Below, in pieces: positions 7,131 through 63,274 of a DNA stretch of 64,000 nucleotides. The notes below the pieces were generated by a model that made no database searches, had not been told where the DNA came from, and worked only from the letters and a program-made list of their open reading frames with translations. Both the position numbers and the translations under genes were made by a program. The number at the start of each line of letters is the position of its first letter. Positions within the stretch are counted from its first letter, which is position 1. Source of the DNA: Octopus sinensis (lineage: Eukaryota); the NCBI RefSeq assembly GCF_006345805.1, contig NC_043003.1, positions 65,844,001-65,908,000 of the forward strand, read 5' to 3'.

Positions 7131-7674
7131 CATACATACATACATACATACATACATACATAGATACATACATGCATACATACATACATATGTATATATA
7201 CTTGCATTTATATATAAAGAGATAGATGAAGTTATACACACACTCATAACTTTGTTGTTTATTCTGAACTTCCTGTATTTATATAGGAAAAGGAATGGAA
7301 AAAGAGGTCTGGAAAATATCTTTATAACATATGGGTTGAGAGAAACGGACGGTGCAGAAAGTTATCCTGGTTTGATACAGGGATATTACAACTGTTTAGT
7401 GTACAATCAAGCATGCATGTAAAGGAACAAAACAAGATGTGGCATATATCATAATTTCTAAAAATTTTCCTGGGATTAAGTGTGATTCCTGTCATATAAC
7501 CACGGTCTGGTGCAAGGTTACTCTTCACAAAATCCCTTTATTCATAAAACAGGTTTAACATATAACAGAGCAAAGACCACATAATGGTCGAGTATATGTT
7601 GGTATTAGGAGATTTATTTAAAGCAATTCTATACTAGATCTTTTCAAAAGACTTAAAATGAAAGATTATGTGAA

Positions 7675-8058
7675 TATTCTTTTCTACTCTAAGCACAAAG
7701 CTCAAAATTTTTGGAGAGGGGGTCAATCGATTAGATCGACTCCAGTATACAACTGGTACTTAATTTATAAAACCCGAAAGGATGAAAGGTAAAGTCAAAC
7801 TCGGTGGAATTTGAATTCAGAACGTAAAGATGAAATACCTATTTAGAAATACCTATTTCCACAGAGAGGACAAACAAGGACAGACAGACATATTAAGTCG
7901 ATTACATCGAATCCAGTGCGTAACTGGTACTTAATTTATCGAGAGGATGAAAGGCAAAGTTGACCTCGGCGGAATTTGAACTCAGAACGAAGCAGCATAC
8001 GAAAAACCGCTAATCATTTCGCCTGGCGTGCTAACGTTTCTGCCAGCTCGACGCCTTA
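7675..8058 (-). mobile_element. Dimeric tRNA-derived SINE family 1 (Deu/Nin-like central domain)
   Basis: Head GGCG.CGAGCTGGCAGAA.CGTTAGC, box B GAGTTCAAATTCC and domain GCCGAGGTC.ACTTTGCCTTTCATCCT..GATAAATTAAGTACCAG, the last present twice. Confidence 0.8.
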
Positions 8059-9041
8059 GATTATGTAAATATTAGCTCTCTAATTGATGTCATATAAACG
8101 GAGGGAAGAACAGGCATATAAATGGTTATATATCATGATGAAGCGAATAACTGCAACTAATATCCCATTCATTTAATTCAGACTACCAGCACAAACTTTC
8201 TTCGCCTTTCACATTTTCAAACTAAGCGACACCGTATTTTCATCGACATTACTCCACCTAGCAAAGGATCATCCTGCTAAAAGTTATATGAAAGTAGAAT
8301 GACCAATATACACTACACTTTTTCATAAAGATTCCTCATAACTTTCCCAATACAGATACACAGACTTCCCCTTCTTATTGTCATTGAGCTATCTGTCTGT
8401 CTGTCTGTCCGCCTGTCTCTCTATATATATACAGAGAGAAAAGACATAGATAGATGGATAAACAGATTGACAAACAATGCAAACATTACATCAATTTAAA
8501 ATGTTTGCATTGCTCAATTAAATGGAGTCGCATGAAACGGTCGTACTGCATTACCTCTGGATATCCTTGATATTTATTATGATTATAATCACCCCATTTT
8601 GAATTATATTGATAATACCATACTAAATTCTGGTACCTTCAACTTCAGTACCATATTCCTCTGAATCTACTTTTTACTGAACTTATATATATATATATAT
8701 ATATATCGTTAGATGGGAGCCTTTTTCTTTTTTTGAAACATCGTTTTTTAATTACAAATAAATAATAATATGATAAATGTTCTTCATTTAAACACCACCT
8801 GTACCCAAAGACGTATTTCGAGATATGGCCGATTCAAAAGCTCACGAATAACTGGCAGAAGTAGGATTACGTTATTTTAGCTGATAAAAACCACTGGTAA
8901 CAATGATTCTGTTGACAAGAAATGACAACAAAATGAACAGCGTTAATAATAATCGAATGAATAGCGAAGGGCATAAATATAGTTCCAAACACTTTATTTC
9001 TTATAGGCATATTACTTTTACATGACTCAGAGCGAAAATTG

Positions 9042-9789: not shown

Positions 9790-10110
<321 letters not shown>

Positions 10111-10413: not shown

Positions 10414-11035
10414 TTAGGGCCAACGAAAATCTCTATTGACCATACGATAAAACTTCTCGTTAAATGGTCGGTAAAAATCTCTGAGGCGTTTAAGTATTGT
10501 TATATCAACAGTTGGATGCGGTCTCCCTTTCGTTTTCCCTAAGCAATGAGGGTGTCCGCTTCCTTCCGATTTCTTCAAACATGGGAATCCTTTCGTTTCA
10601 TTAAAATAGAAATGCTTCTCCGAAATTATCCTTTTCAAGCCAAGAAAATCTTGCACCCGCCCAAGTTCTCGAGCCGGGTCTGATATCAATTGCTCTCCAC
10701 TGACGAAATGTATTTGTGACAATGGAAAATAATTGAGCCATCGTTCTAGGTATTTCGCATAAACACCAATGCGTATAATATTTCTACTCGTATCAACAAT
10801 ACGTGTCGATAGATTGAGAAACGCTAAATCTTCAAAGCGATGCATTTTGGTAATTCCTTTAGAGGCCAACTGGGTATAGTCAGAAATAGCACGAGTTACT
10901 GGATCACGTACAATTATCAGGATTTTCATATCTTTAGACATGTTATATATCCTTCTTGGAACATCTTTGGTAATAAAATAACTTGGAGTTTTCTCGATTG
11001 TCATTTGTCCTTCGATAGTCGCGGGCATTTTCTTC
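10414..11035 (-). CDS. HS3ST: Terminal coding exon of a heparan sulfate glucosamine 3-O-sulfotransferase (HS3ST2/3/4/6- or Hs3st-B-like)
   Basis: The ORF has the family motifs [20 protein letters not shown] (3'-phosphate-binding region), FPCL...[12 protein letters not shown] and a C-terminal FRWP. A splice acceptor ttttacaatttcag|G AAG AAA ATG lies at 11036/11035. This phase-2 junction matches the conserved intron after the WYR motif in HS3ST genes, so the ORF-track ATG at 11028 is an internal Met. Confidence 0.95.
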
Positions 11036-14580: not shown

Positions 14581-15879
14581 ATTCTTTCATCTAACTTACC
14601 ACTGACTCCTTGACCACTCCCCAAGTATGATATTTTGCGCTATGCCTACCCCCAAAAAGTCCCCACCACCACTCCTTTAAAACCTGCTAAATGTATAAAT
14701 GCTAATACAATTCTTGTTAAATAGCTTCCTGAAGATTTCTCTTGAATGAACAGTACTAGTCCTGTAGAAGCTCCTTCATATAATAAATTAATTTTACTCT
14801 GCTATATTTTACTGCTATGAGTACTTACTTACTGTGGTTAACCCCGGATCAACCCGGGACCTACATATATATAATATATATATATAATATATAATATATA
14901 TTATATATATATATATATATATTATATATATTCATGCATATATGTTTGTATATATTTGCATATGCGTATGTACGTGTGTGTGTGAGCTTTCGTTTTGTCA
15001 CGAAGTGAAGCACTGATATTTTCATTTTACGTATTCTTTGGAAGTTACTATGAAATATGGCGTCGTGACATTTATATGGGGATGAACGTTCTAAAATGTT
15101 TTCCTAGTAATATAAGCATAAACCTTACACTTTCTTTACACTTATATCGATACACACACATACATATACATACATATATATATATATATATTCTGACTTA
15201 CGGGAATAGTATGTCAATACAATAGTCAATGGTTGTGAGTCGGATGTGTAAATTATAATTCCCCCGGGGCACTTTGATAAGAAATGTATTCTCTTAGAAG
15301 TAAGTTTGTATAATTATATTTACATGAGAATGGTATTGGTGCTATTTAAAAAAATCGCATAATGTTCATGGGATTCAATAGTGCTAGCGACATAATTTGC
15401 CTTTCACACTTTAGCACGGATTTTGATTGATGGATATTTATCCTTCTTCATTTCAACATGTCTCCTGTAAGTCTTCTTGAATGCATTTCTCAGTTTTTGG
15501 GCTCTTATATAAGGAAATTTAAAAAAAAATATTCAAGAGCAAATATCTTATTTTCTATACATCATATACGTATAAATATTGATAGTAAATTTTGGCACAA
15601 GGCCAGCAATTTTGGGGGAGGTGTAAGTCGATTAAAACGATCACAGCGTTCAAGTGGTTCTTATTTTATCGACCCTGATAGTATCAACGGCAAAGCTGAC
15701 CTCGGCGGAATTCGATCTCAGGACGTAAAGACAGGCAAAATGTAGTTAAGAATATTGCTCCGCGTGCTAGCAATACTGCTCGTTGGCCTTCTTTTGTGCG
15801 TATAAATATTAATTGTAAATTTTATCTTTATTAAAACTGTAAATCTCTCCAGCTTGCTGATTAATAGTTATATCCAAAT

Positions 15880-16280
15880 AAGCTGGCGAGCTGGCAGAAA
15901 CATTACCACGCCGGGTGAAATGTTTTGTCGTATTTCGTCCGCCGCTGCGTTCTGAGTTCAAATTCTGCTTAGGTCGACTTTGCCTTTCATCCTTTCGGGT
16001 TGATAAATTAAGTACCAGTTATGCACTGGGGTCGATATAATAGACTTAATCCGTTTGTCTGTCCTTGTTTGTCCTCTCTGTGTTTATCCCCTTATGGGTA
16101 GTAAAGAAATAGGTATTTCCTCTGTTTATACATTCTGAGTTCAAATCCCGCCGAGGTCAGCTTTGCCTTTCATCCTTCCAGCTCGATACGTTAAATACCA
16201 GTTGCCTACTGGAGTGGTTCTAATCGACTGCCATCTCCCCCAAAATTTCGGGCCTTGTGCCAAGAGTAGAAAATAATATT
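15880..16280 (+). mobile_element. Dimeric SINE family 1
   Basis: Head, monomer with tail B (…GGGTAGTAAAGAAATA), then a headless monomer with tail A (…GGCCTTGTGCC.AGAGTAGAAAA). Confidence 0.85.
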
Positions 16281-25299: not shown

Positions 25300-25900
25300 A
25301 GCAGCGAGCTGGCAGAATCGTTTGCGCGCTGGATGAAATGCTTAGTGGTATTTCGTCTGCCGTTACGTTTTGAGTTCAAATTCCGCCGAGGTCGATTTTG
25401 CTTTTCATCCTTTCGGGGTCGATTAAATAAGTACCAGTTACGCACTGGGGTCGATATAATCGACTTAATCCGTTTGTCTGTCCTTGTTTGTCCTCTCTGT
25501 GTTTAGCCCCTTGTGGGTAGTAAAAAAAAAAGGTATTTCGTCTGTCTTTACGTTTTCAGTTCATATTCCGCAGAGATCAACTTTGCCTTTCATCCTTTCG
25601 GGGTAAATAAATTATTTACCAGTTGTGTACTGCTGTCGATCTAATCGACTGGACCCCTCTTCCGAAATTTCGGGCCTTGTGTCTAGAGTAGAAAAAGTTG
25701 TTTGCACTCCGGACAAAGAACTTAGCAGCATTTTGTTTTTCTTTACGTTCTAAGTTGGAATTCCCCCGTTGTCGACGTCGTATTCTATTCTTTCGGTGCG
25801 GATAAATTAAGAACCAGTTGACACTGGTGTCGATGTAATCGGCTTACCCACCTTCTCTGAACCTGCTGGCCTTGTGCCAAATTTTGAAACTAATATTGAA
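25300..25900 (+). mobile_element. Trimeric SINE family 1 array
   Basis: The same dimer junction, followed by a third decayed monomer. Confidence 0.8.
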
Positions 25901-36480: not shown

Positions 36481-36739
36481 TATATAATATTCGTGTTCCA
36501 GAACTGAATATTGCAAGGAAAAAAAAATTTCTATGAGTAGCTTCCTTTCCGGCAATGAGCACCATACCAAGAAATCTACAGGTATTTCTTGTGTATATCG
36601 AACGTACAATACTGGGACATCTCATTCCAGCAATGTGTTTTATTGTCTATGAATTTCAAAAACGTTATAACTCTCAGATCATGGGACTATACACCACTTA
36701 ATATATATATATATATACATATATACATACATATATACC

Positions 36740-36958
36740 AAAAGGGGCTAAACATAGAGGAGACAAACAAGGACAGACAAACGGATTAAGTCGATTATAT
36801 CGACCACAGTGCGTAACTGGTACTTATTTAATCGACCCTGAAAAGATGAAAGGCAAAGTCGACCTCGGCAGAATTTGAGCTCAGAACGTAACGGCAGACG
36901 AAATACCGCTAAGTATTTCCACCGGCGAGCTAACGATTCTGCTAGCTCGCCGCCTTAG
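36740..36958 (-). mobile_element. Monomeric SINE family 1 (tail B)
   Basis: Full head, central domain and tail B, without a second monomer. Confidence 0.85.
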
Positions 36959-39079
36959 TATATATATATATATTAATGCAAGAATATATTCGGGGTTTTC
37001 AACATACTTGTCAAAAAAAAAAATGATCCGTTGTGCTCTGTATGGCACAGTTCAAGTTTAAAAAAATACGTATCTTTAACTTAATTTTGTTTAATTACTG
37101 CCCTTGATTTTCTGCCCCAGGTTTAATAATTCAGCGTCTTTCCCACAAAACGGAAGTAATTTTAATTGTTTTTGGTACACTAAATTAACCATATGATCCT
37201 TCAGTCGGATGAATTATATTGTTCCATGGACAAGGAAGTAATTATCCCTAGCATACAGCAACATTTTAATAAATTGATAACATAGCACTATAAAACGTTT
37301 GGTCCTGTCAAAAACTCTTTGAAAGCACTATCGTCGCCATCATCATTTGTTTTGGGGTCTTTTTGTGCGTGTGTCTGTGTGTTTGCAGGCACGCGTACGC
37401 GGCCTTCTGCCAAATTAGAAAAACCATTAAAATATATAATATAAAAATTTACAAGTGGTATTATTTGGCCTGCCAAATCACCTCACAGAGGCGAATAATG
37501 TGCCAAGTTTTGATTAATAAATTCAAATGTGCTTAAGTGTGCTTACTTAATAGTTAAATAGCCCATACTTCAATATAATTAAAATAATCGTGTTTTACTC
37601 AATATGAAATAAACGAATTCTCATATTTTTCACAAACATTAAACGACTTTTAGCATCGAAGTCATACAGAGAAAATGAAGCTAGTTTATGTTCTGACCAC
37701 ATTTCTCTTTCATTTCTCTGTCTCTTTCTTTCGTCCCAGGTGATCAAGATATGAAACGAATAAAGTTTTATTAATATAACTATCTCGATGCACAGATTCA
37801 GCATTTTACGGCCTGCGGCAAATAAACGTCATACAGGGGAGTTAGCGTTCTGTTGTAACGCAGCCCACTGAAAGATATAGACTGAAGACTATTTAATATT
37901 CTATTCAATATTTTATAATGATGTGACAATATATGTCATTTATAATGTTAGATTTTCTCATAACAAATTTCCATAATCCATCGTTCATTTCTAAAATTTA
38001 TAGCCTTGGTGTTGAACGTTTGAAAGCGCAAGAGCAATGCAAGCCAATTACCGAAACTAGATTTTTTTCCTAGTAAACGTCAATTCATATTACTTACGCA
38101 ATTAATATTCTAGAAAATGTCACGAAAATTATATAATTTTATTTGCCTTCCCTATAAATTTCTGAGAATTTTGCGAAAATAAAACTTCAATTCTTCTAAC
38201 GCAGTGGTAGTAATAACTGATATATATGGAAGGAACGCCGTCGATAGAGTCAAATATATTAAAGGTTTTGCGTCGGGTAATTGGGAAGATCAGGTGATTT
38301 ACATATCCAGCAAGACATCAACTGCTGAAATATGCAAAGAATCTTTATTTATTCATATTTAGATAACAAATTAAAAGCAACATAAAATTAAGTATTGGCA
38401 CGATGATGCGAGTAAATATGGAATTTACACACCTTGGTAATCATAAAATTTATTTTTATGAGGAAAATATCTTTTTCTTGTATCAAAGTTTTAAAATACT
38501 TGCAAATAAAGGTATGACATGTCGTTAAATATTGATCATAAAGGTGGAAATATTTATATTCCTCTTACTAATTAAATCAATCAATATATGCTGCTATTAA
38601 GAAGAAGTATCGACAATTATCACGTAATACTATTGATTTGTTTCGATTATAGAGAAAGCCAATAGCTACCAGGCTGCATTAGTGTACACAAACACAAAAC
38701 TGAATCATCACAATCACGATATAGCTGGCACACATAGTCGTAAATTATAAGTCGGTATTGGTGAATACTTGACTTCAGAGCTAAACTAACGTAACGATAT
38801 ATAAGGGTTTCAGTTATAACAGAGCCCATCTCTGATAACACTGCACTACGTGAATACATCGTTAGCTAATACACGTACAATGTCGATTTTGCGTAGCCTT
38901 TAGTTACAAAGCCTTTCCGAATTACTGATTTCTTCCGGATCAGGGGTGATCACCTTAGTCAACAGACCCTAAAGTAGACTAATACTAAATTTATTTAAAT
39001 AATTTATTGACATGCATATACCTGTACATTACTATAAATGTATATTACTATAATTTACTATAGTCACTTATTGCATTAT

Positions 39080-39300
39080 TGCCCACAAGGGGCTAAACAT
39101 AGAAGGGACAAACAAGGACAGACAAAGTGATTTAGTCGATTACATCGACCCCAGTGCGCAACAGTACTTAATTTATCGACCCCGAAAGGATGAAATGCAA
39201 AGTCGACCTCGGGGGAATTTAAACTCAGAACGTAACGGTAGAAGAAATACCGCTAAGTATTTCGCCCGGCGAGCTAACGATTCTGCCAGCTCACCGCCTT
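39080..39300 (-). mobile_element. Monomeric SINE family 1 (tail B)
   Basis: Same structure as 36740-36958. Confidence 0.85.
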
Positions 39301-43001: not shown

Positions 43002-43022
43002 TATATATATATATATATATAT

Positions 43023-43062
<40 letters not shown>

Positions 43063-44466
43063 ATAGCGGTGTGTGTTTGTGACTAGAAGAATAATAAGCT
43101 GTTATTAAATCAACGAGACGAGGTGATGAAACAATCTACAAAGAGGTTGTAAAGCAACAGCTTAATAGCGACGAGAGGCAAACAGCGATGTCCTTAGAAA
43201 TCATTGTTGCTGGAAACATAAGTGAAGTTGTTTTTGACCTCTTGCCTCACCCATGTATCACGTGGCACACAGACACGTTTCCTTGGCATCCATGCATCAT
43301 ATATGATATACATTCCCAATAGTACTCCTGTCTACCTCGTGTATTGATGCAAACCTTCCTACTTTCCAAACAACTCATGTCTGTAAAACTAAAGAAAAGA
43401 AAGGTAATGATATATGTCCCATAAAACTAATCAATAAAACAAAACGGCCTTGAGATACGTCCATTCATGACAAACACAAATGTTTGATAATGAATTTTGC
43501 ATAGGTATAAGGCTTGAATATTAAATCGACCCCACAGCTGGTCTAGTTTTATATTTTATCTAACACGGAGGGATGGAGGCAAATTGATTTTCCACGGCTG
43601 AATTCAGAGCGTATAGATCTGGATGAAATATCGTATTGCATTTCGTCCAGTGCTTTAACAACTCTATAAATCGGTCACCAAGATTTAGATAATTTTTTAA
43701 CTAATTTTGTCAGAATGTCATCAATTTTGGAGGGAGTGGGAACGTCTATTACATTGACATCAGTATGCGGTTGGCACACATTTCATCAACTCAGAAAGGA
43801 TGAAAGCAAAGCTGACTTGAGCGGGATGTAAATACAGAACGTTAAGAACCGGAAAAAAATCATTATTCATTTTGTCCGGCGCTTTAACTATTTTAGCAAT
43901 ACACTGTACCAGCAATAACAACCCTTTCTTCTTTAGGGACACATTTTGAAACTTTAGGAGAGGCATTGCTGGTTCAAGATGAACTCTATAGACAGAGTAG
44001 ATTTCTTTTGGCAAACAGGTCCACCATACATAACACCTTGATCACCTTGACCGACCAGACCGTCGAGCATCCATTTGATACCGCTGGTCACAGCACGCTG
44101 TCCACTCCTCTCTGAATCGCGGCTTTCTCATCCACGTTATCCCAATCAATGAGTCAACAGCATTGATATTCGCAGATAAATTCAGTTTAGAATTATACCA
44201 CAATATATGTATGGTGATATGGTGGTGGGTTCACCATATATATATTGTGGTATAATCCTATGCTGAAGGTATCTGCGAATATCAAGACTGTTGATTCACT
44301 GAAACACGGTGACTTCCGGCTAAAATAATATGTCTTGTCTCTAGATCTGGCCCTGAAGTGATGATAGTATCCGAAGGATAGTAAGGGAAGTGAATAAGGT
44401 TTAGATATCTACATGTAACTTCAATATTACAATCACCATAAGTCTTATATATATATATATATATAT

Positions 44467-44506
<40 letters not shown>

Positions 44507-45912
44507 ATAGCGGTGTGTGTTTGTGACTAGAAGAATAATAAGCTGTTATTAAATCAACGAGACGAGGTGATGAAACAATCTACAAAGAGGTTGTAAAGCA
44601 ACAGCTTAATAGCGACGAGAGGCAAACAGCGATGTCCTTAGAAATCATTGTTGCTGGAAACATAAGTGAAGTTGTTTTTGACCTCTTGCCTCACCCATGT
44701 ATCACGTGGCACACAGGACACGTTTCCTTGGCATCCATGCATCATATATGATATACATTCCCAATAGTACTCCTGTCTACCTCGTGTATTGATGCAAACC
44801 TTCCTACTTTCCAAACAACTCATGTCTGTAAAACTAAAGAAAAGAAAGGTAATGATATATGTCCCATAAAACTAATCAATAAAACAAAACGGCCTTGAGA
44901 TACGTCCATTCATGACAAACACAAATGTTTGATAATGAATTTTGCATAGGTATAAGGCTTGAATATTAAATCGACCCCACAGCTGGTCTAGTTTTATATT
45001 TTATCTAACACGGAGGGATGGAGGCAAATTGATTTTCCACGGCTGAATTCAGAGCGTATAGATCTGGATGAAATATCGTATTGCATTTCGTCCAGTGCTT
45101 TAACAACTCTATAAATCGGTCACCAAGATTTAGATAATTTTTTAACTAATTTTGTCAGAATGTCATCAATTTTGGAGGGAGTGGGAACGTCTATTACATT
45201 GACATCAGTATGCGGTTGGCACACATTTCATCAACTCAGAAAGGATGAAAGCAAAGCTGACTTGAGCGGGATGTAAATACAGAACGTTAAGAACCGGAAA
45301 AAAATCATTATTCATTTTGTCCGGCGCTTTAACTATTTTAGCAATACACTGTACCAGCAATAACAACCCTTTCTTCTTTAGGGACACATTTTGAAACTTT
45401 AGGAGAGGCATTGCTGGTTCAAGATGAACTCTATAGACAGAGTAGATTTCTTTTGGCAAACAGGTCCACCATACATAACACCTTGATCACCTTGACCGAC
45501 CAGACCGTCGAGCATCCATTTGATACCGCTGGTCACAGCACGCTGTCCACTCCTCTCTGAATCGCGGCTTTCTCATCCACGTTATCCCAATCAATGAGTC
45601 AACAGCATTGATATTCGCAGATAAATTCAGTTTAGAATTATACCACAATATATGTATGGTGATATGGTGGTGGGTTCACCATATATATATTGTGGTATAA
45701 TCCTATGCTGAAGGTATCTGCGAATATCAAGACTGTTGATTCACTGAAACACGGTGACTTCCGGCTAAAATAATATGTCTTGTCTCTAGATCTGGCCCTG
45801 AAGTGATGATAGTATCCGAAGGATAGTAAGGGAAGTGAATAAGGTTTAGATATCTACATGTAACTTCAATATTACAATCACCATAAGTCTTATATATATA
45901 TATATATATATA
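43002..45912 (+). repeat. Near-perfect tandem duplication of a ~1444-1445-bp unit with (TA)n at each junction
   Basis: The offset is 1444 at the start (43081 vs 44525) and 1445 later (identical ORFs at 43760 and 45205). The only difference I saw is ACACAGACAC vs ACACAGGACAC. Confidence 0.95.
44146..44302. repeat. ~72-bp-arm imperfect hairpin with a 13-nt loop (duplicated at 45591-45747)
   Basis: TCAATGAGTCAACAG..TTGATATTCGCAGATA..ATTATACCACAATATATGTATGGTGA pairs with TCACCATATATATATTGTGGTATAAT..TATCTGCGAATATCAA..CTGTTGATTCACTGA. Confidence 0.85.
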
Positions 45913-46374
45913 TTCTTACCAAGGCAAGGTATTATTGAGGTAATTATCCCTCGCGATCTCCTGCAACCATATAAGAACTAACAACGCTTCATGCTTTCTC
46001 GATTATAACCTTTATTACCCTAGCAAATTGTTTGCATTTCCATGGCTTGGAGCACATTCTTTAACACTAGCAAACATAGATCCTGTCATAAGACAAAGAA
46101 AGTTTGTAACAGCCGAGACTACCAACACGTTTTTCAACTGTTTTTTTGCTTATGAATCTGTTTTATTGTATTTACTGACTGTCTCTCAATTAGTATTATA
46201 AACACTACTTTATTTAATCTAATCAACATCAAAATAATCGTTTTCATTACAATTATGATTTATAATTTACACTAGTGCTCTAATTATCCACTTAACTTAT
46301 TCATTAATTTGGCCAATGTGGGTTTTTATGCAACAATCGATCTATAATTTCTTAATCACACTGTCATATGACAA

Positions 46375-46780
46375 ATAATCTTTTCTACTTTAGGCACAAG
46401 GCCTGAAATATTGGGGGAGGGGACTAGTCGATTACACCGACCCCAGTGTTGCATTGGTTCTTAGTTTACCGACCCCAAAAGGATGAAAGGCATAGTCGAC
46501 CTCGGCGGAATTTGAACTCAGAACGTAGCGGCAGACGAAATACCTATTTCTTTTTTCTACCCACAAGGGGCTAAACACAGAGAGGAAAAACAAGGACAAA
46601 CAAACGGATTAAGTCGATTATATCGACCCCAATGCATAACTGGTACTTATTTAATCGACCCCGAAAGGTTGAAAGACAAAGTCGACCTCGGCGGAATTTG
46701 AACTCAGAACGTAACGGCAGACGAAATACCGCTAAGCATTTTGCCCGGCGTGCTAACGATTCTACCAGCTCGCCCCTTAG
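46375..46780 (-). mobile_element. Dimeric SINE family 1
   Basis: Same tail-B to headless-monomer junction (…AAAGAAATA|GGTATTTCGTCTG on the minus strand). Confidence 0.85.
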
Positions 46781-47277
46781 TATATGACAAATAATATAAC
46801 GTACGCTAGATTAGGTTTCCGTCATGAAAGTAAAAACTACCTTAGTATATCCTGAAGCAGTATCTTTCAACGCGGTCTTCTTTATTCACTTCTAACAATA
46901 GAAGAACTAGCTATATACGGGTTAATTTTCTTCGTATCCATTTATATTGTCGTGGTAGCTTATGTTGTCAATGGTAAATTAAAATGTCGTGCTATTATTT
47001 ATTCATAGCCTATTTATACTAACGTAGAAGCAGTGACTTTCATATTCTCGTATATGTATATGTGTGTGTGTGTGTGTGTGTGTGCGTGTGTGTGTGTGTG
47101 TGTATGTGTGTGTTTGTGTGTACATATTTACATACACACGCACATGCACACATATGTATTCACGCACTCGCAAAATCTCACACCAGTATTTCCATGAGGC
47201 ACCTTTGAACAATTGTGATCATCCATGGTCACACATACAAACATACACATAATTCTCTTGTACACGCTCACACATAC

Positions 47278-56825: not shown

Positions 56826-56883
56826 AACATTGATAGATAGATTATTTATCATTACTTACACTCACACACACACACACACACAC

Positions 56884-56923
<40 letters not shown>

Positions 56924-57621
56924 CATACATACATGTGTGTGTGTGTGTGTGTGCGTGTGTACGTACATAGTTCTCCTTGAATGAGAATCTAAAGCACATA
57001 CACTCGAATGTGACTTCAGCATCGTTGCCTAAAACATTGCTCACACACTACATATTATTATAACTACTTCAGAACATTACTCCATATCAGAAATACAAAT
57101 GCATTGTAATAAATACCTGATACCTGAACTAAAAAAAAAAAATAATAACAACAACAATAATAGAATAAAAGTGAATAAAATTTTCCAGAATATAATTCAA
57201 TGAGTCATTTTGACAGCACATGCTATTTTAGCCAAGTAATGAGTCAGGTGTCAGACACAAAAGCTGCTTTGTTGATGAAGAGGGTTTATTGTGGCAATGA
57301 AACAATTTATTGGTGATTTAGTCGCTCATATCAAAAGTGTAGGAGAGAGAAAGACCGAAGGAGATAATATATTTTAACACACATATACACAAATATTGTA
57401 CAACAAAACGATACAATCACTTGGAAATTTATATATATTAGTATATTTATTGATAATTTATTTTACTGAAGTAAATATAATTTAATAAATGTTTCTTAAG
57501 GAGTTTTGTTAATATTATATAATATATAGTGTGGAAATCGCTTAGTGTAATCAATTTGGAACAGAAGCTTTACATTCGATTAAGAATGTCCGGCTGAAAA
57601 CATTATACAACATATACAACA

Positions 57622-61145: not shown

Positions 61146-61429
61146 CTCTTTTACTCTTTTACTCTTTTACTGGTTTCAGTCATGTGACTGTGGCGATGCT
61201 GGAAAACCGCCTTTAGACGAGCAAATCAACCCCAGGATTAAGTTTTTCTAAGCCAATTACTTATTCTATCGGTCTCTTTTGCTGAACCGCTAAGTTACCC
61301 TAATCCTAACTTGGCTGAAGATTTATTTCCTTTCTTTCAGATGTCGTATACACTTACATTTCTTACCACAATCTTATCTTATTTATATTAAATTCACTCA
61401 TCTTTTATCTTTTATTTGTCGCACTTATT

Positions 61430-62050
61430 GTTTTCTACTCTAAGCACAAGGCCCCAAATTTTTGGGGTGGGGTACAGTCATTTACATCGATTCCAGTATG
61501 CAACTAGTACTTAATTTATGGACCTCCAAGATGATGAAAAGGCAAAGTCGACCTCGGCGGAATTTGAACTCAGAACGTAAAGACAGACGAAATACCGTTA
61601 GGCATTTCGCATGGCGTACTAACGTTTCTTATTTCTTTATTGCCCACAAGGGGCTAAACATAGAGGGGACAAACATAGACAGACAAACGGATTAAGTCGA
61701 TTACATCGACCCCAGTGTGTAACTGGTACTTAATTTATCGACCCCGAAAGGATAAAAGGTAAAGTCAACCTCGGCGGAATGTGAACTTAGGACGTAAAGG
61801 CAGACGAAATACCTATTTCTTTACTACCCACAGGGGGTTAAACACAGAGAGGACAAACAAGGACAGACAAACGGATTAAGTCGATTATATCGATCCCAGT
61901 GCGTAACTGGTACTTATTTAATCGACCATGAATGGATGAAAGGCAAAGTCGACCTCGGCGGAATTCGAACTCAGAACGTAGCGGCAGACGGCTCTTGGCA
62001 TTCTAAGCATTTCGCCAGGCGTACTAACGTTTCTGCCAACTCGTTACCTT
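61430..62050 (-). mobile_element. Trimeric SINE family 1 array
   Basis: Three central domains, two tail-B modules and a terminal tail A. Confidence 0.85.
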
Positions 62051-62059
62051 AAGACAAAT

Positions 62060-62278
62060 GAATATTCTTTTCTAATCTAGGCACAATGCCCGAAATTTTG
62101 GGGAGGGGGCAGTCGATTAGATCGAGCCTAGTACGCAACTGGTACTTAATTTATCGACCCCGAAAAGATGAAAGTGAAAGTTGGCCTCAGCGGAATTTGA
62201 ACTCAGAACATAAAGACAGACAAAAACTGCTAAGCATTTCGCCCGTCATGCTAACGTTTCTGCCTGCTCGCCGCCTTA
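62060..62278 (-). mobile_element. Monomeric SINE family 1 (tail A) abutting the 5.8S copy
   Basis: On the minus strand, the head TAAGGCGGCGAGCAGGCAGAAACGTTAGC begins 4 nt after the end of 5.8S homology. Confidence 0.85.
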
Positions 62279-62282
62279 GGGA

Positions 62283-62428
62283 TCGGACGGGGTCCCGAGA
62301 CAGTGGGATCCCGAGGCCGCAATGTGTGTTCGAGGAGTCGATGTTCACTGAGTCCTAAAATTCGCATAAGTTCACGCGGATAGCCGCGCTCTTCATCGAC
62401 GGACGAGCCGAGTGATTCCCCCGTCGCA
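62283..62428 (-). rRNA. Solitary, nearly full-length 5.8S rRNA-derived sequence (probably a pseudogene)
   Basis: The reverse complement reads GAATCACTCGGCTCGTCCGTCGATGAAGAGCGCGGCTATCCGCGTGAACTTATGCGAATTTTAGGACTCAGTGAACATCGACTCCTCGAACACACATTGCGGCCTCGGG. It is colinear with metazoan 5.8S (GGATCACTCGGCTCG..GTCGATGAAGAACGCAGC..GAATT..AGGACACA.TGA.CATCGAC..TCGAACGCAC.TTGCGGCC). Both flanks are SINE sequence, with no ITS, 18S or 28S. Confidence 0.88.
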
Positions 62429-63149
62429 CTTATTGAACTGTAGCCATGCTGGAGTTCTGCCCTGAAGAATTTGGTCGAAGAAATCGAGACCTGTACTGAT
62501 AGGTGCGCGCACGCGCGTGTGTGTATTTGAGTATATGTATGTATGTTACTTCTCTATTTAATTATAACTCTTCCTCTGAGGAGGGATTCGGTTTCCAACT
62601 AAGATACAAGGCTCCATCTTTTGGGATGTAGTTAACACAGACAAATTCATATTTGGAACTTGAGAAAAGTCCTGCATATTTTTACTGTTCCATTCACAGA
62701 TTGTACTTGTAATGTACGAATTAGCCAGTCGATTTCTCTTTCTGAAAACTCCAGTTTATCCAGATTCTGCGAGTGCTCAAATTATTATTTGTATGAATAT
62801 AAATTCATAGTCTGGATACAGAAGCTGGAGGTTTCGAAGCAGTTGTCCATCGATATTCTAATTTTCTTTGATTTTGAAAGAGATATTTAAATCTGCTGGG
62901 CAGCTGACCTTTATGAGGGTACATACTTTTGGCCCTCGGTCCTATACAACAATATCCGGCCTGTCATGTTTACATTTGGTATGTAAGTATGTTTTTATGG
63001 GAGTCTGTTATTTTATTTTATCGATCTCTTCCGTAGAATTGCTAATGATGCGGGGACTTCAAGAAAACAACACTGGCTGTTAAGCAGCCCAGGGGAATAA
63101 AAACAGACAGAAACACACATGCAACTTACACAAACATACATATTTATAC

Positions 63150-63200
<51 letters not shown>

Positions 63201-63216
63201 TGTGTGTGTGTATATG

Positions 63217-63274
<58 letters not shown>

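What the first reader, a model, noticed from the sequence alone, without database searches (positions are those of the whole stretch)
62263..62432. Solitary 5.8S rRNA copy joined 4 nt upstream of a SINE head: possible rRNA-SINE chimera
Seen: about 145 nt of 5.8S homology with no ITS or other rDNA, lacking roughly the last 8 nt. It is followed on the same strand by TCCC and a complete family-1 SINE. Differences from the usual metazoan sequence preserve pairing (GCAG/CUGC becomes GCGG/CCGC, and the 3' hairpin CUCGGGA/UCUCGGG still pairs), so it may reflect a divergent functional rRNA rather than random decay. Established: chimeric retrocopies with a small RNA 5' and a retroelement 3' exist (U6-L1 type), and SINE heads derived from 5S and 28S rRNA are known. 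Inference: either a retrocopy of mature 5.8S fused to a SINE or chance adjacency. I found no target-site duplication around the pair.
Basis: partly seen in the sequence, partly recalled or inferred. Interest (0 to 1): 0.7.

Follow-up and report, generated by a model that had tools for sequence, protein, structure and literature searches.

The report
Dead 5.8S rRNA copy in SINE retro-insert
A decayed, spacer-less copy of 5.8S ribosomal RNA sits at the front of a 992-base insertion made of four SINE units, bounded by a 13-base target-site duplication: an ordinary by-product of retrotransposition, with an RNA partner (5.8S) that the chimera papers I read do not list.

Summary
The 5.8S homology is real. 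Rfam RF00002 gives 71.5 bits, E 9e-16, on the minus strand at 62432..62280, and it is the only rRNA hit in 64 kb. There is no ITS, 18S or 28S. It abuts the first base of a complete family-1 SINE with no spacer needed.

CAATAAGTGCGAC occurs at 62435..62423 and again at 61430..61418. It brackets 992 bp: 5.8S (about nt 12-145) plus four SINE units. No inner element has its own duplication. Joining the two flanks restores a continuous tail of an older family-2-like SINE.

The 5.8S therefore entered as the 5'-most module of one retro-insertion primed on a SINE tail. The modules were most likely joined by reverse-transcriptase template switching (U6/L1-type, multipartite).

The copy is a pseudogene. 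It scores half of real genes (134-142 bits), and GAAUUGCAG has become GAAUUUUAG. Pairing is kept somewhat better than random decay predicts, so some differences probably come from the host's own functional 5.8S.

Only 1 of 9 SINE heads in the window carries 5.8S, so nothing here suggests a 5.8S-headed SINE family. This is a new member of a known kind, of modest interest. Whether other copies exist in the genome could not be tested.

The parts
62423..62435 (-). Target-site duplication, 5' copy (CAATAAGTGCGAC). It is part of the older family-2-like SINE tail.
   Evidence: An exact 13-mer is repeated at 61418..61430. The 12/12 match was reached by 0 of 500 shuffles.
62280..62422 (-). Processed 5.8S rRNA pseudogene, about nt 12-145 of about 157, with no ITS.
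   Evidence: Rfam RF00002 gives 71.5 bits, E 9e-16. Aligned with real environmental 5.8S genes. Differs at 11-12 of 89 columns that are >=95% conserved. Real genes score 134-142 bits.
62061..62279 (-). Family-1 SINE unit E2: a complete 'A-type' monomer, from head CTAAGGCGGCGAGC to tail ...GATTAGAAAAGAATATT.
   Evidence: blastn against the window consensus gives 86-90% identity. The head starts at the same base as duplication-bounded copies.
62053..62060 (-). 8-nt filler CATTTGTC between the E2 tail and the E3 head. Together with the preceding AATATT it forms a 14-nt stretch that looks like a 3' trailer or old duplication of the E2 source copy.
   Evidence: Read directly from the sequence. No matching copy lies upstream.
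61814..62052 (-). Family-1 SINE unit E3: a complete 'B-type' unit, from head TTAAGGTAACGAG to ...GGGTAGTAAAGAAATA.
   Evidence: 88.9% identical to the consensus. 89-93% identical to unlinked B units.
61629..61813 (-). Family-1 SINE unit E4: B-type unit starting at consensus position about 57, as in the canonical dimers.
61431..61628 (-). Family-1 SINE unit E5: A-type unit starting at head position about 19-20 and ending in the canonical tail ...TTAGAGTAGAAAA, directly before the 3' duplication copy.
61418..61430 (-). Target-site duplication, 3' copy (CAATAAGTGCGAC).
62436..62512 (-). Upstream half of the interrupted older family-2-like SINE 3' region (...GGTCTCGATTTCTTCGACC...CTCCAGCATGGCTACAGTT).
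   Evidence: Motif search. Aligns colinearly with five family-2 tails.
61380..61417 (-). Downstream half of the same interrupted SINE tail (AAATAAAAGATAAAAGATGAG...).
   Evidence: The joined flanks align without a break to family-2 tails ...TGAAACAAGTAAAAGAGTAAAAGAG.

Best explanation
The 5.8S segment is a dead, processed retro-pseudogene of the host's 5.8S rRNA. It forms the 5'-most module of one 992-bp composite retro-insertion (62422..61431, minus strand) with the order 5.8S(~12-145) - SINE A monomer - 8-nt filler - SINE B unit - SINE B unit (from position 57) - SINE A unit (from position 19).

Shown:
- The whole block is bracketed by a perfect 13-bp target-site duplication.
- It ends in the canonical family-1 SINE tail.
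- It interrupts the tail of an older family-2-like SINE, which is restored when the flanks are joined.

Inferred:
- The reverse transcriptase of the family-1 SINE's partner LINE primed at the nicked target on a SINE RNA tail.
- It then switched template several times, each time at or near the 5' end of the RNA being copied. The last switch was onto mature 5.8S rRNA about 12 nt from its 3' end.
- It copied 5.8S to about 11 nt from the 5' end before the cDNA was joined to the upstream target end.
- The copy has no function and has been decaying since.
For: 1. Perfect 13-mer CAATAAGTGCGAC at 62435..62423 and 61430..61418. The match was reached by 0 of 500 shuffles.
2. The joined flanks align colinearly with five family-2 SINE tails across the join.
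3. No direct repeat beyond chance surrounds 5.8S alone, 5.8S+E2, E2, E3-E5, E3-E4 or E5.
4. The duplication length (13) and its AATA start match the family's own insertions: 14-bp AATATTyACATAAT around 8059..7671 and ATTATTTGTCATAT around 46780..46374.
5. Both full SINE heads inside the block start at the same first base as duplication-bounded copies. This fits junctions at RNA 5' ends.
6. The 5.8S has no ITS, 18S or 28S nearby, and its ends lie within about 12 nt of the mature termini.
7. Units inside the block are no more alike (84-85%) than unlinked copies (77-94%), so this is not a local tandem duplication.
8. Literature: LINE template-switch chimeras carry small RNAs at the 5' side and are flanked by duplications, including tripartite ones with 14-bp repeats (PMC2104539, PMC4476161, bioRxiv 10.1101/2025.02.02.635956). 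U5 and U3 segments are 3'-truncated through internal switching (PMC4476161).
Against: - Three to four consecutive template switches in one event is more than the one or two documented.
- The apparent microhomologies at the junctions are not significant. The 5.8S 3' end against the SINE head gives P about 0.22, and the 5.8S 5' end against the target gives P about 0.68.
- The 5.8S differs from highly conserved states at 11-12 of 89 columns. Meanwhile the duplication is perfect and unit E3 is at most about 7% from its nearest relative. That is more 5.8S divergence than expected if canonical rRNA was copied in this very event, unless the host's true 5.8S is itself unusual.
- Only one locus could be examined. 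No genome, reads or orthologous site were available.
Confidence: 0.6

Rival explanations
1. Secondary copy of an older composite. The 5.8S-SINE joint formed earlier at another locus. A transcript of that composite region, ending in the A-type SINE tail, was later retrotransposed here as one piece.
For: - This explains why the 5.8S (differing at 11-12 of 89 conserved columns) and the A-type units (77-86% pairwise) look older than the perfect 13-bp duplication.
- The 14 nt AATATTCATTTGTC after the E2 tail has the length and AATATT start of this family's duplications. E2 could have been inserted conventionally at a source locus, with its 5' duplication copy then lost by 5' truncation.
Against: - The 5' end of the retrocopy falls within about 12 nt of the natural 5.8S 5' end. 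That would be roughly a 2% coincidence for random 5' truncation of a transcript of about 1 kb or more.
- E3-E4-E5 still lack internal duplications, so RNA-level joining is needed somewhere in any case.
- The apparent excess divergence may only reflect an unusual host 5.8S.
Confidence: 0.2
2. Chance adjacency. The 5.8S retro-pseudogene and the SINE units arrived by separate, sequential insertions into a SINE-rich hotspot, and their individual target-site duplications have been lost.
For: - The region is dense in SINEs: about 20 family-1 hits and 6 family-2 tails in 64 kb.
- SINE units at 10-18% divergence could have lost recognisable 13-14-bp duplications.
Against: - The only significant direct repeat brackets the whole block, and it is perfect.
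- Later insertions would each have had to land exactly at element boundaries.
- Neither 5.8S alone nor 5.8S+E2 shows even a degenerate repeat (best 7/12, shuffle P 0.65-1.0).
Confidence: 0.1
3. A 5.8S-headed SINE, or a copy of a divergent functional 5.8S variant. Either the 5.8S+SINE is a propagating element, or the divergence reflects a second functional rRNA type.
For: - The compensatory A-U to G-C change lies at columns where all 103 environmental genes have A and T.
- Only 3 of 25 pairs are broken, against 6-8 expected for random decay (P 0.007-0.10).
- SINE families with 5S- and 28S-derived parts are known (PMC10946416).
Against: - Only 1 of 9 SINE heads in the window has 5.8S.
- The pair has no duplication of its own.
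- The 5.8S is truncated at both ends and scores 71.5 bits against 134-142 for real genes.
- The near-universal GAAUUGCAG is GAAUUUUAG and GAACGCA is GAACACA.
- From general knowledge, 5.8S is made by Pol I processing and has no internal Pol III promoter.
Confidence: 0.05
4. A DNA-level rDNA fragment (orphon), filler DNA captured at a break, or an assembly artefact.
For: Repeat-rich regions are prone to misassembly. A perfect 1.4-kb tandem duplication elsewhere in the window may hint at assembly problems.
Against: - There is no ITS or other rDNA.
- The boundaries coincide with RNA termini.
- A misassembly would not create a matching 13-bp duplication plus an empty site that can be reconstituted.
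Confidence: 0.03

Closest known systems
U6/L1-type chimeric retrocopies formed by LINE template switching (Buzdin et al. 2002/2003 as cited in PMC4476161; bioRxiv 10.1101/2025.02.02.635956)
   Same: - A small structural RNA sits at the 5' side, in the same orientation, fused directly to a retroelement whose 3' tail abuts the target-site duplication.
- The whole is flanked by a 13-15-bp duplication.
- It is a dead-on-arrival, single-locus product.
   Different: - The partner RNA is 5.8S rRNA. It is not among the partners listed there (U1-U6, U3, 5S, 28S, tRNA, 7SK, 7SL, Y), and '5.8S' has 0 occurrences in both texts.
- The 3' partner is a set of full-length SINE units rather than a 5'-truncated LINE.
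- The host appears to be a cephalopod (from my memory of the SINE sequences, not tested), so the enzyme is not mammalian L1.
Tripartite chimeric retroelement of Magnaporthe grisea (WEIRD - Mg-SINE - MGL LINE), PMC2104539
   Same: - Several different transcripts are fused head to tail.
- They are flanked by one pair of identical short direct repeats (14 bp there, 13 bp here).
- This is taken as evidence for more than one template jump in a single LINE-mediated event.
   Different: Here there are five modules, which implies three to four joints. Four of the modules are SINE units of one family, and no LINE segment is included.
U5/L1 and U3/L1 chimeras with 3'-truncated small RNA (PMC4476161)
   Same: The small RNA lacks its 3' end, which is explained by an internal landing of the switching reverse transcriptase. 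Here about 12 nt of the 5.8S 3' end are missing.
   Different: The RNA species, the host and the retroelement partner all differ.
rRNA-derived SINEs: SINE3/5S-SINEs and SINE28 (PMC10946416)
   Same: rRNA-derived sequence is physically joined to a SINE or LINE-dependent module.
   Different: Those are propagating families with many copies. The 5S heads carry a Pol III promoter. Here a single copy is seen, with no evidence of propagation.

Membership tests
Functional 5.8S rRNA gene (Rfam RF00002 within an rDNA unit) | Matches the covariance model above the gathering score | tested here: met
   71.5 bits against gathering 42.
Functional 5.8S rRNA gene (Rfam RF00002 within an rDNA unit) | Lies between 18S and 28S with ITS1 and ITS2 | tested here: not met
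   No SSU or LSU hit in 64 kb at E<=1. The flanks are a duplication plus SINE tail on one side and a SINE head on the other. Real comparators do sit between SSU and LSU.
Functional 5.8S rRNA gene (Rfam RF00002 within an rDNA unit) | Full length with conserved motifs intact, and a score like real genes | tested here: not met
   About 11 nt are missing at the 5' end and about 12 nt at the 3' end. GAATTGCAG has become GAATTTTAG and GAACGCA has become GAACACA; 11-12 of 89 conserved columns are changed. Score is 71.5 against 134-142 bits.
Template-switch chimeric retrocopy (U6/L1 type, bi- or multipartite) | Small cellular RNA copy fused directly, in the same orientation, 5' of a retroelement copy | tested here: met
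   5.8S ...CCGATCC is followed at once by the SINE head CTAAGGCGGCGAGC on the same strand.
Template-switch chimeric retrocopy (U6/L1 type, bi- or multipartite) | One target-site duplication flanks the entire chimera and none flanks its parts | tested here: met
   A perfect 13-bp repeat surrounds the 992-bp block, and nothing significant surrounds the inner elements. The empty site is reconstituted.
Template-switch chimeric retrocopy (U6/L1 type, bi- or multipartite) | The 3' end is the retroelement's own tail next to the duplication, at a target typical for that element's endonuclease | tested here: inconclusive
   The canonical tail ...GAGTAGAAAA abuts the duplication. Duplication length 13 compares with 14 and 14 in two other family-1 insertions, all starting with A(A/T)TA. 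There are only three sites, and the partner LINE is not identified.
Template-switch chimeric retrocopy (U6/L1 type, bi- or multipartite) | All parts inserted at the same time (presence or absence as one unit at orthologous sites) | not testable with these tools
   No host or related genomes were available. The junction 25-mer is absent from the metagenome and prokaryote collections, and a protein-space trick found nothing.
rRNA-headed SINE family (as 5S-SINEs, SINE28) | Many dispersed copies share the same rRNA/SINE junction | tested here: inconclusive
   In the window only 1 of 9 family-1 heads is preceded by 5.8S, and there is no second 5.8S hit. The genome-wide count could not be tested.
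rRNA-headed SINE family (as 5S-SINEs, SINE28) | The rRNA+SINE unit is bounded by its own duplication | tested here: not met
   No repeat surrounds 5.8S+E2 (best 6-7/12, shuffle P 0.75-1.0).

The most novel reading that the evidence does not exclude
The block records three to four consecutive template switches by a cephalopod LINE reverse transcriptase within a single integration, ending on mature 5.8S rRNA. 5.8S would then be a new RNA partner for such chimeras. The segment copied (about nt 12-145) would be the part left after excluding the two terminal stretches which, from general knowledge, pair with 28S rRNA, suggesting that ribosome- or pre-ribosome-bound 5.8S was the template. A further possibility is that other copies sharing this junction exist, making it a young 5.8S-carrying composite repeat.
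Probability: 0.15. Interest if true: 0.55.

Novelty: new member of a known kind. Interest (0 to 1): 0.3.

Why it matters
Chimeric retrocopies are natural records of how LINE reverse transcriptases behave in vivo. A duplication-bounded five-module chimera in a mollusc, with 5.8S rRNA as the last template, would extend the known range of partner RNAs. It would also suggest that multi-jump template switching, the process thought to create SINE dimers and new SINE families, is frequent in this SINE-rich genome. In practice it is a caution for annotation: solitary Rfam 5.8S hits of this kind are retro-pseudogenes, not rDNA. The locus has no evident function, so the significance is modest.

Tried and rejected
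1. I translated the 90-aa ORF that spans the junction and searched the 5.8-billion-protein collection, hoping to find spurious ORFs from the same or orthologous loci. There were 2 candidates and none scored.\n\n2. I scanned metagenome contigs and genome contigs for the exact junction 25-mer and found 0 hits. This is uninformative, because those collections apparently hold no host DNA.\n\n3. I scanned genome contigs for the GCGGC...CCGCG variant and found 27 hits. All are chance matches in GC-rich bacterial genomes, mostly Pseudomonas.\n\n4. I tested microhomology as the guide for the switches. The SINE head CTAAGGCGGCGA resembles the 5.8S 3' end CTGAGGGTCGGC, and the target TAAG resembles the 5.8S 5' end. 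Neither is significant (P 0.22 and 0.68), so this is not claimed.\n\n5. I tested a local tandem duplication as the origin of the SINE array. It is rejected, because units inside the block are no more alike than unlinked copies.\n\n6. I searched for nested duplications around every inner element, both exact and with mismatches. None was found.\n\n7. I tried to identify the species through the HS3ST-like exon. The best relative is 85% identical and unnamed, so the 'octopus' attribution rests only on my memory of the SINE sequences.\n\n8. ARAGORN and Rfam find no tRNA similarity in the SINE heads, so the tRNA origin of the heads is not shown here.

Full report
**Observation**

Rfam's 5.8S model matches the window once, on the minus strand at 62432..62280 (71.5 bits, gathering 42, E 9e-16). 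A permissive scan (E<=1) of all 64 kb finds no 18S or 28S and no second 5.8S. All other hits are microsatellite artefacts, and ARAGORN finds no tRNA. The solitary 5.8S homology without other rDNA is therefore real.

**The neighbouring SINEs**

- blastn of the neighbouring repeat against the window finds about 20 family-1 SINE pieces.
- Aligning nine 5' ends shows that the head starts (C/T)TAAGGCGGCGAGCTGGCAGAA.
- The copy 8059..7671 is bounded by a 14-bp duplication (AATATTyACATAAT) that ends directly before CTAAGG. The copy 46780..46374 has ATTATTTGTCATAT.
- The SINE next to the 5.8S therefore begins at 62279, straight after 5.8S-derived ...CCGATCC.
- This SINE (E2, 62279..62061) is a complete monomer, 86-90% identical to a crude window consensus.
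- The family is modular. There are B-type monomers and B+A dimers. The A-type monomers occur only in this block.

**The target-site duplication**

Upstream of the 5.8S on its own strand lies the 3' region of a second SINE family (motif CTCCAGCATGGC, six copies in the window). The 12-mer AATAAGTGCGAC, which cmscan had aligned to 5.8S positions 1-13, occurs exactly twice in the window: at 62434..62423 and 61429..61418. Extended by one base, the repeat is the 13-mer CAATAAGTGCGAC at 62435..62423 and 61430..61418.

- The second copy follows directly on the canonical tail (...TTAGAGTAGAAAA) of the last of four family-1 SINE units.
- Joining the two flanks with one copy of the repeat gives ...CTCCAGCATGGCTACAGTTCAATAAGTGCGAC|AAATAAAAGATAAAAGATGAG.
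- That joined sequence aligns without interruption to five family-2 tails (...CAGTCAAATGACTGAAAC|AAGTAAAAGAGTAAAAGAG).
- A systematic search at every element boundary finds no exact repeat of 7 nt or more, and no 12-mer match above shuffle expectation, around any inner element.
- The outer pair is 12/12, reached by 0 of 500 shuffles.

The 992 bp from 62422 to 61431 therefore behave as one insertion into an older SINE tail. Its duplication has the length and AATA start typical of this family.

**Anatomy of the block (minus strand)**

| Module | Coordinates | Content |
|---|---|---|
| 5.8S | 62422..62280 | about nt 12-145 |
| E2 | 62279..62061 | A-type monomer, complete |
| filler | 62060..62053 | CATTTGTC |
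| E3 | 62052..61814 | B-type unit, complete head |
| E4 | 61813..~61629 | B-type unit from position 57 |
| E5 | ~61628..61431 | A-type unit from position 19-20 |

Units inside the block are 84-85% identical to each other. That is no more than to unlinked copies (77-94%), so the array is not a local tandem duplication.

**State of the 5.8S copy**

A degenerate pattern that allowed either GCAGC...CTGCG or GCGGC...CCGCG retrieved 103 environmental rDNA contigs. All carry the A...T state. Eight of them were checked with Rfam. Seven carry a 5.8S next to SSU and/or LSU; in the eighth (L051) only the 5.8S reached the threshold. Their 5.8S scores are 134-142 bits, about twice the window copy.

- The best identity to the window copy is 117/135.
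- Against 78 full-length comparators, the copy differs at 11-12 of 89 columns that are >=95% conserved. The comparators average 0.6 and reach at most 9.
- These differences include GAATTGCAG to GAATTTTAG and GAACGCA to GAACACA.
- By alignment it lacks about 11 nt at the 5' end and about 12 nt at the 3' end, and it has no ITS.

It is a processed pseudogene.

22 of the 25 Rfam pairs are standard. Placing the copy's differences from real genes at random breaks 6-8 pairs on average (P 0.007 against the majority sequence, 0.002-0.10 against individual close genes). None of the comparators is the host's own gene. The simplest reading is that part of the differences, perhaps including the compensated G-C pair, was inherited from the host's functional 5.8S, and that the hits in universal motifs are later decay.

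**Mechanism**

The signature is as follows:
- One duplication surrounds everything.
- A SINE tail sits at the 3' end.
- All modules have the same orientation.
- Full SINE heads lie at the internal joints.
- The small RNA sits at the 5' end, with both of its ends close to the mature termini.

This is the signature described for LINE-mediated template-switch chimeras:
- U6/L1 and related chimeras (PMC4476161; bioRxiv 10.1101/2025.02.02.635956).
- The tripartite chimera flanked by identical 14-bp repeats in Magnaporthe (PMC2104539).
- 3'-truncated U5 and U3 segments explained by internal landing (PMC4476161).

I infer target-primed reverse transcription on a SINE tail, followed by successive switches, the last onto 5.8S rRNA. 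This is an inference. The number of jumps (three or four) exceeds documented cases, and the apparent junction microhomologies are not significant.

**Tension and rivals**

The duplication is perfect and E3 is at most about 7% from its nearest relative. Yet the 5.8S departs from conserved states at about 13% of columns. Two readings are possible. Either the host's 5.8S is itself unusual, as hint, or the 5.8S-SINE joint is older and the block is a secondary retrocopy of a composite from elsewhere.

- The secondary-copy reading would also explain the 14-nt AATATTCATTTGTC after E2, which looks like an old duplication.
- It requires a coincidence, however: that 5' truncation fell within 12 nt of the 5.8S start.
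- Sequential independent insertions, a 5.8S-headed SINE family, a DNA-level rDNA fragment and misassembly are each disfavoured by the evidence above.

**Comparison with what is known, and novelty**

5.8S does not appear among the reported chimera partners in the papers I could search. It has 0 occurrences in 10.1101/2025.02.02.635956 and in PMC4476161. The review table in PMC10946416 lists only 5S- and 28S-derived SINEs. The kind of event is nevertheless well known. I rate this as a new member of a known kind, of modest interest.

**Limits**

No host genome, rDNA unit, reads or related species were accessible. Searches in protein space and in the DNA collections found nothing useful. The host was not identified by any tool. 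That the SINEs look like octopus SINEs is my recollection only.

Noticed in passing
window 10414..11028 (-): A 204-aa open exon encoding a sulfotransferase domain (Pfam PF00685, E 1e-26). Its relatives are heparan sulfate glucosamine 3-O-sulfotransferases. The best database relative is only 85% identical and unnamed, so the host species is not represented under a name.
   Followed up: partly
window 43002..45911: A near-perfect tandem duplication with a period of about 1445 bp. 43601-44466 equals 45046-45911 at 100% over 866 bp, and 44446-45000 equals 43002-43555 at 99.8%. This is either a very recent duplication or an assembly artefact.
   Followed up: partly
window, e.g. 46780..46374, 25301..25695, 15879..16280, 8059..7671 (dimers); 36958..36738, 39300..39066 (B monomers): The family-1 SINE is modular. 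There is a B-type monomer (head+body+B tail) and a dimer (B unit plus a head-less A unit with a different tail), with 14-bp duplications that start AATATT/ATTATT. A-type monomers were seen only inside the 992-bp block. The dimers may themselves be products of template switching.
   Followed up: partly
window 16428, 22054, 36438, 51388, 61187 (motif positions): A second SINE family has an internal TG/TA microsatellite, a conserved ...CTCCAGCATGGCCGCAGTCAAATGACTGAAAC 3' region and a (GTAAAAGA)n tail. The copy interrupted by the block is a divergent relative with an (ATAAAAG)n tail.
   Followed up: partly
window-wide (e.g. 56876..56960, 47088..47158, 9797..9867, 63184..63254): More than 120 sub-threshold Rfam 'microRNA' matches (mir-297, mir-3149, mir-1277 and others) all lie on TA/TG microsatellites and fall far below the gathering scores. 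They are artefacts of low-complexity sequence.
   Followed up: yes
window 62053..62066 (-): The 14 nt after the E2 tail (AATATTCATTTGTC) have the length and start of a family-1 target-site duplication, but no partner copy exists upstream. It could be the 3' trailer of the source SINE transcript, or a leftover of an earlier insertion at another locus.
   Followed up: partly
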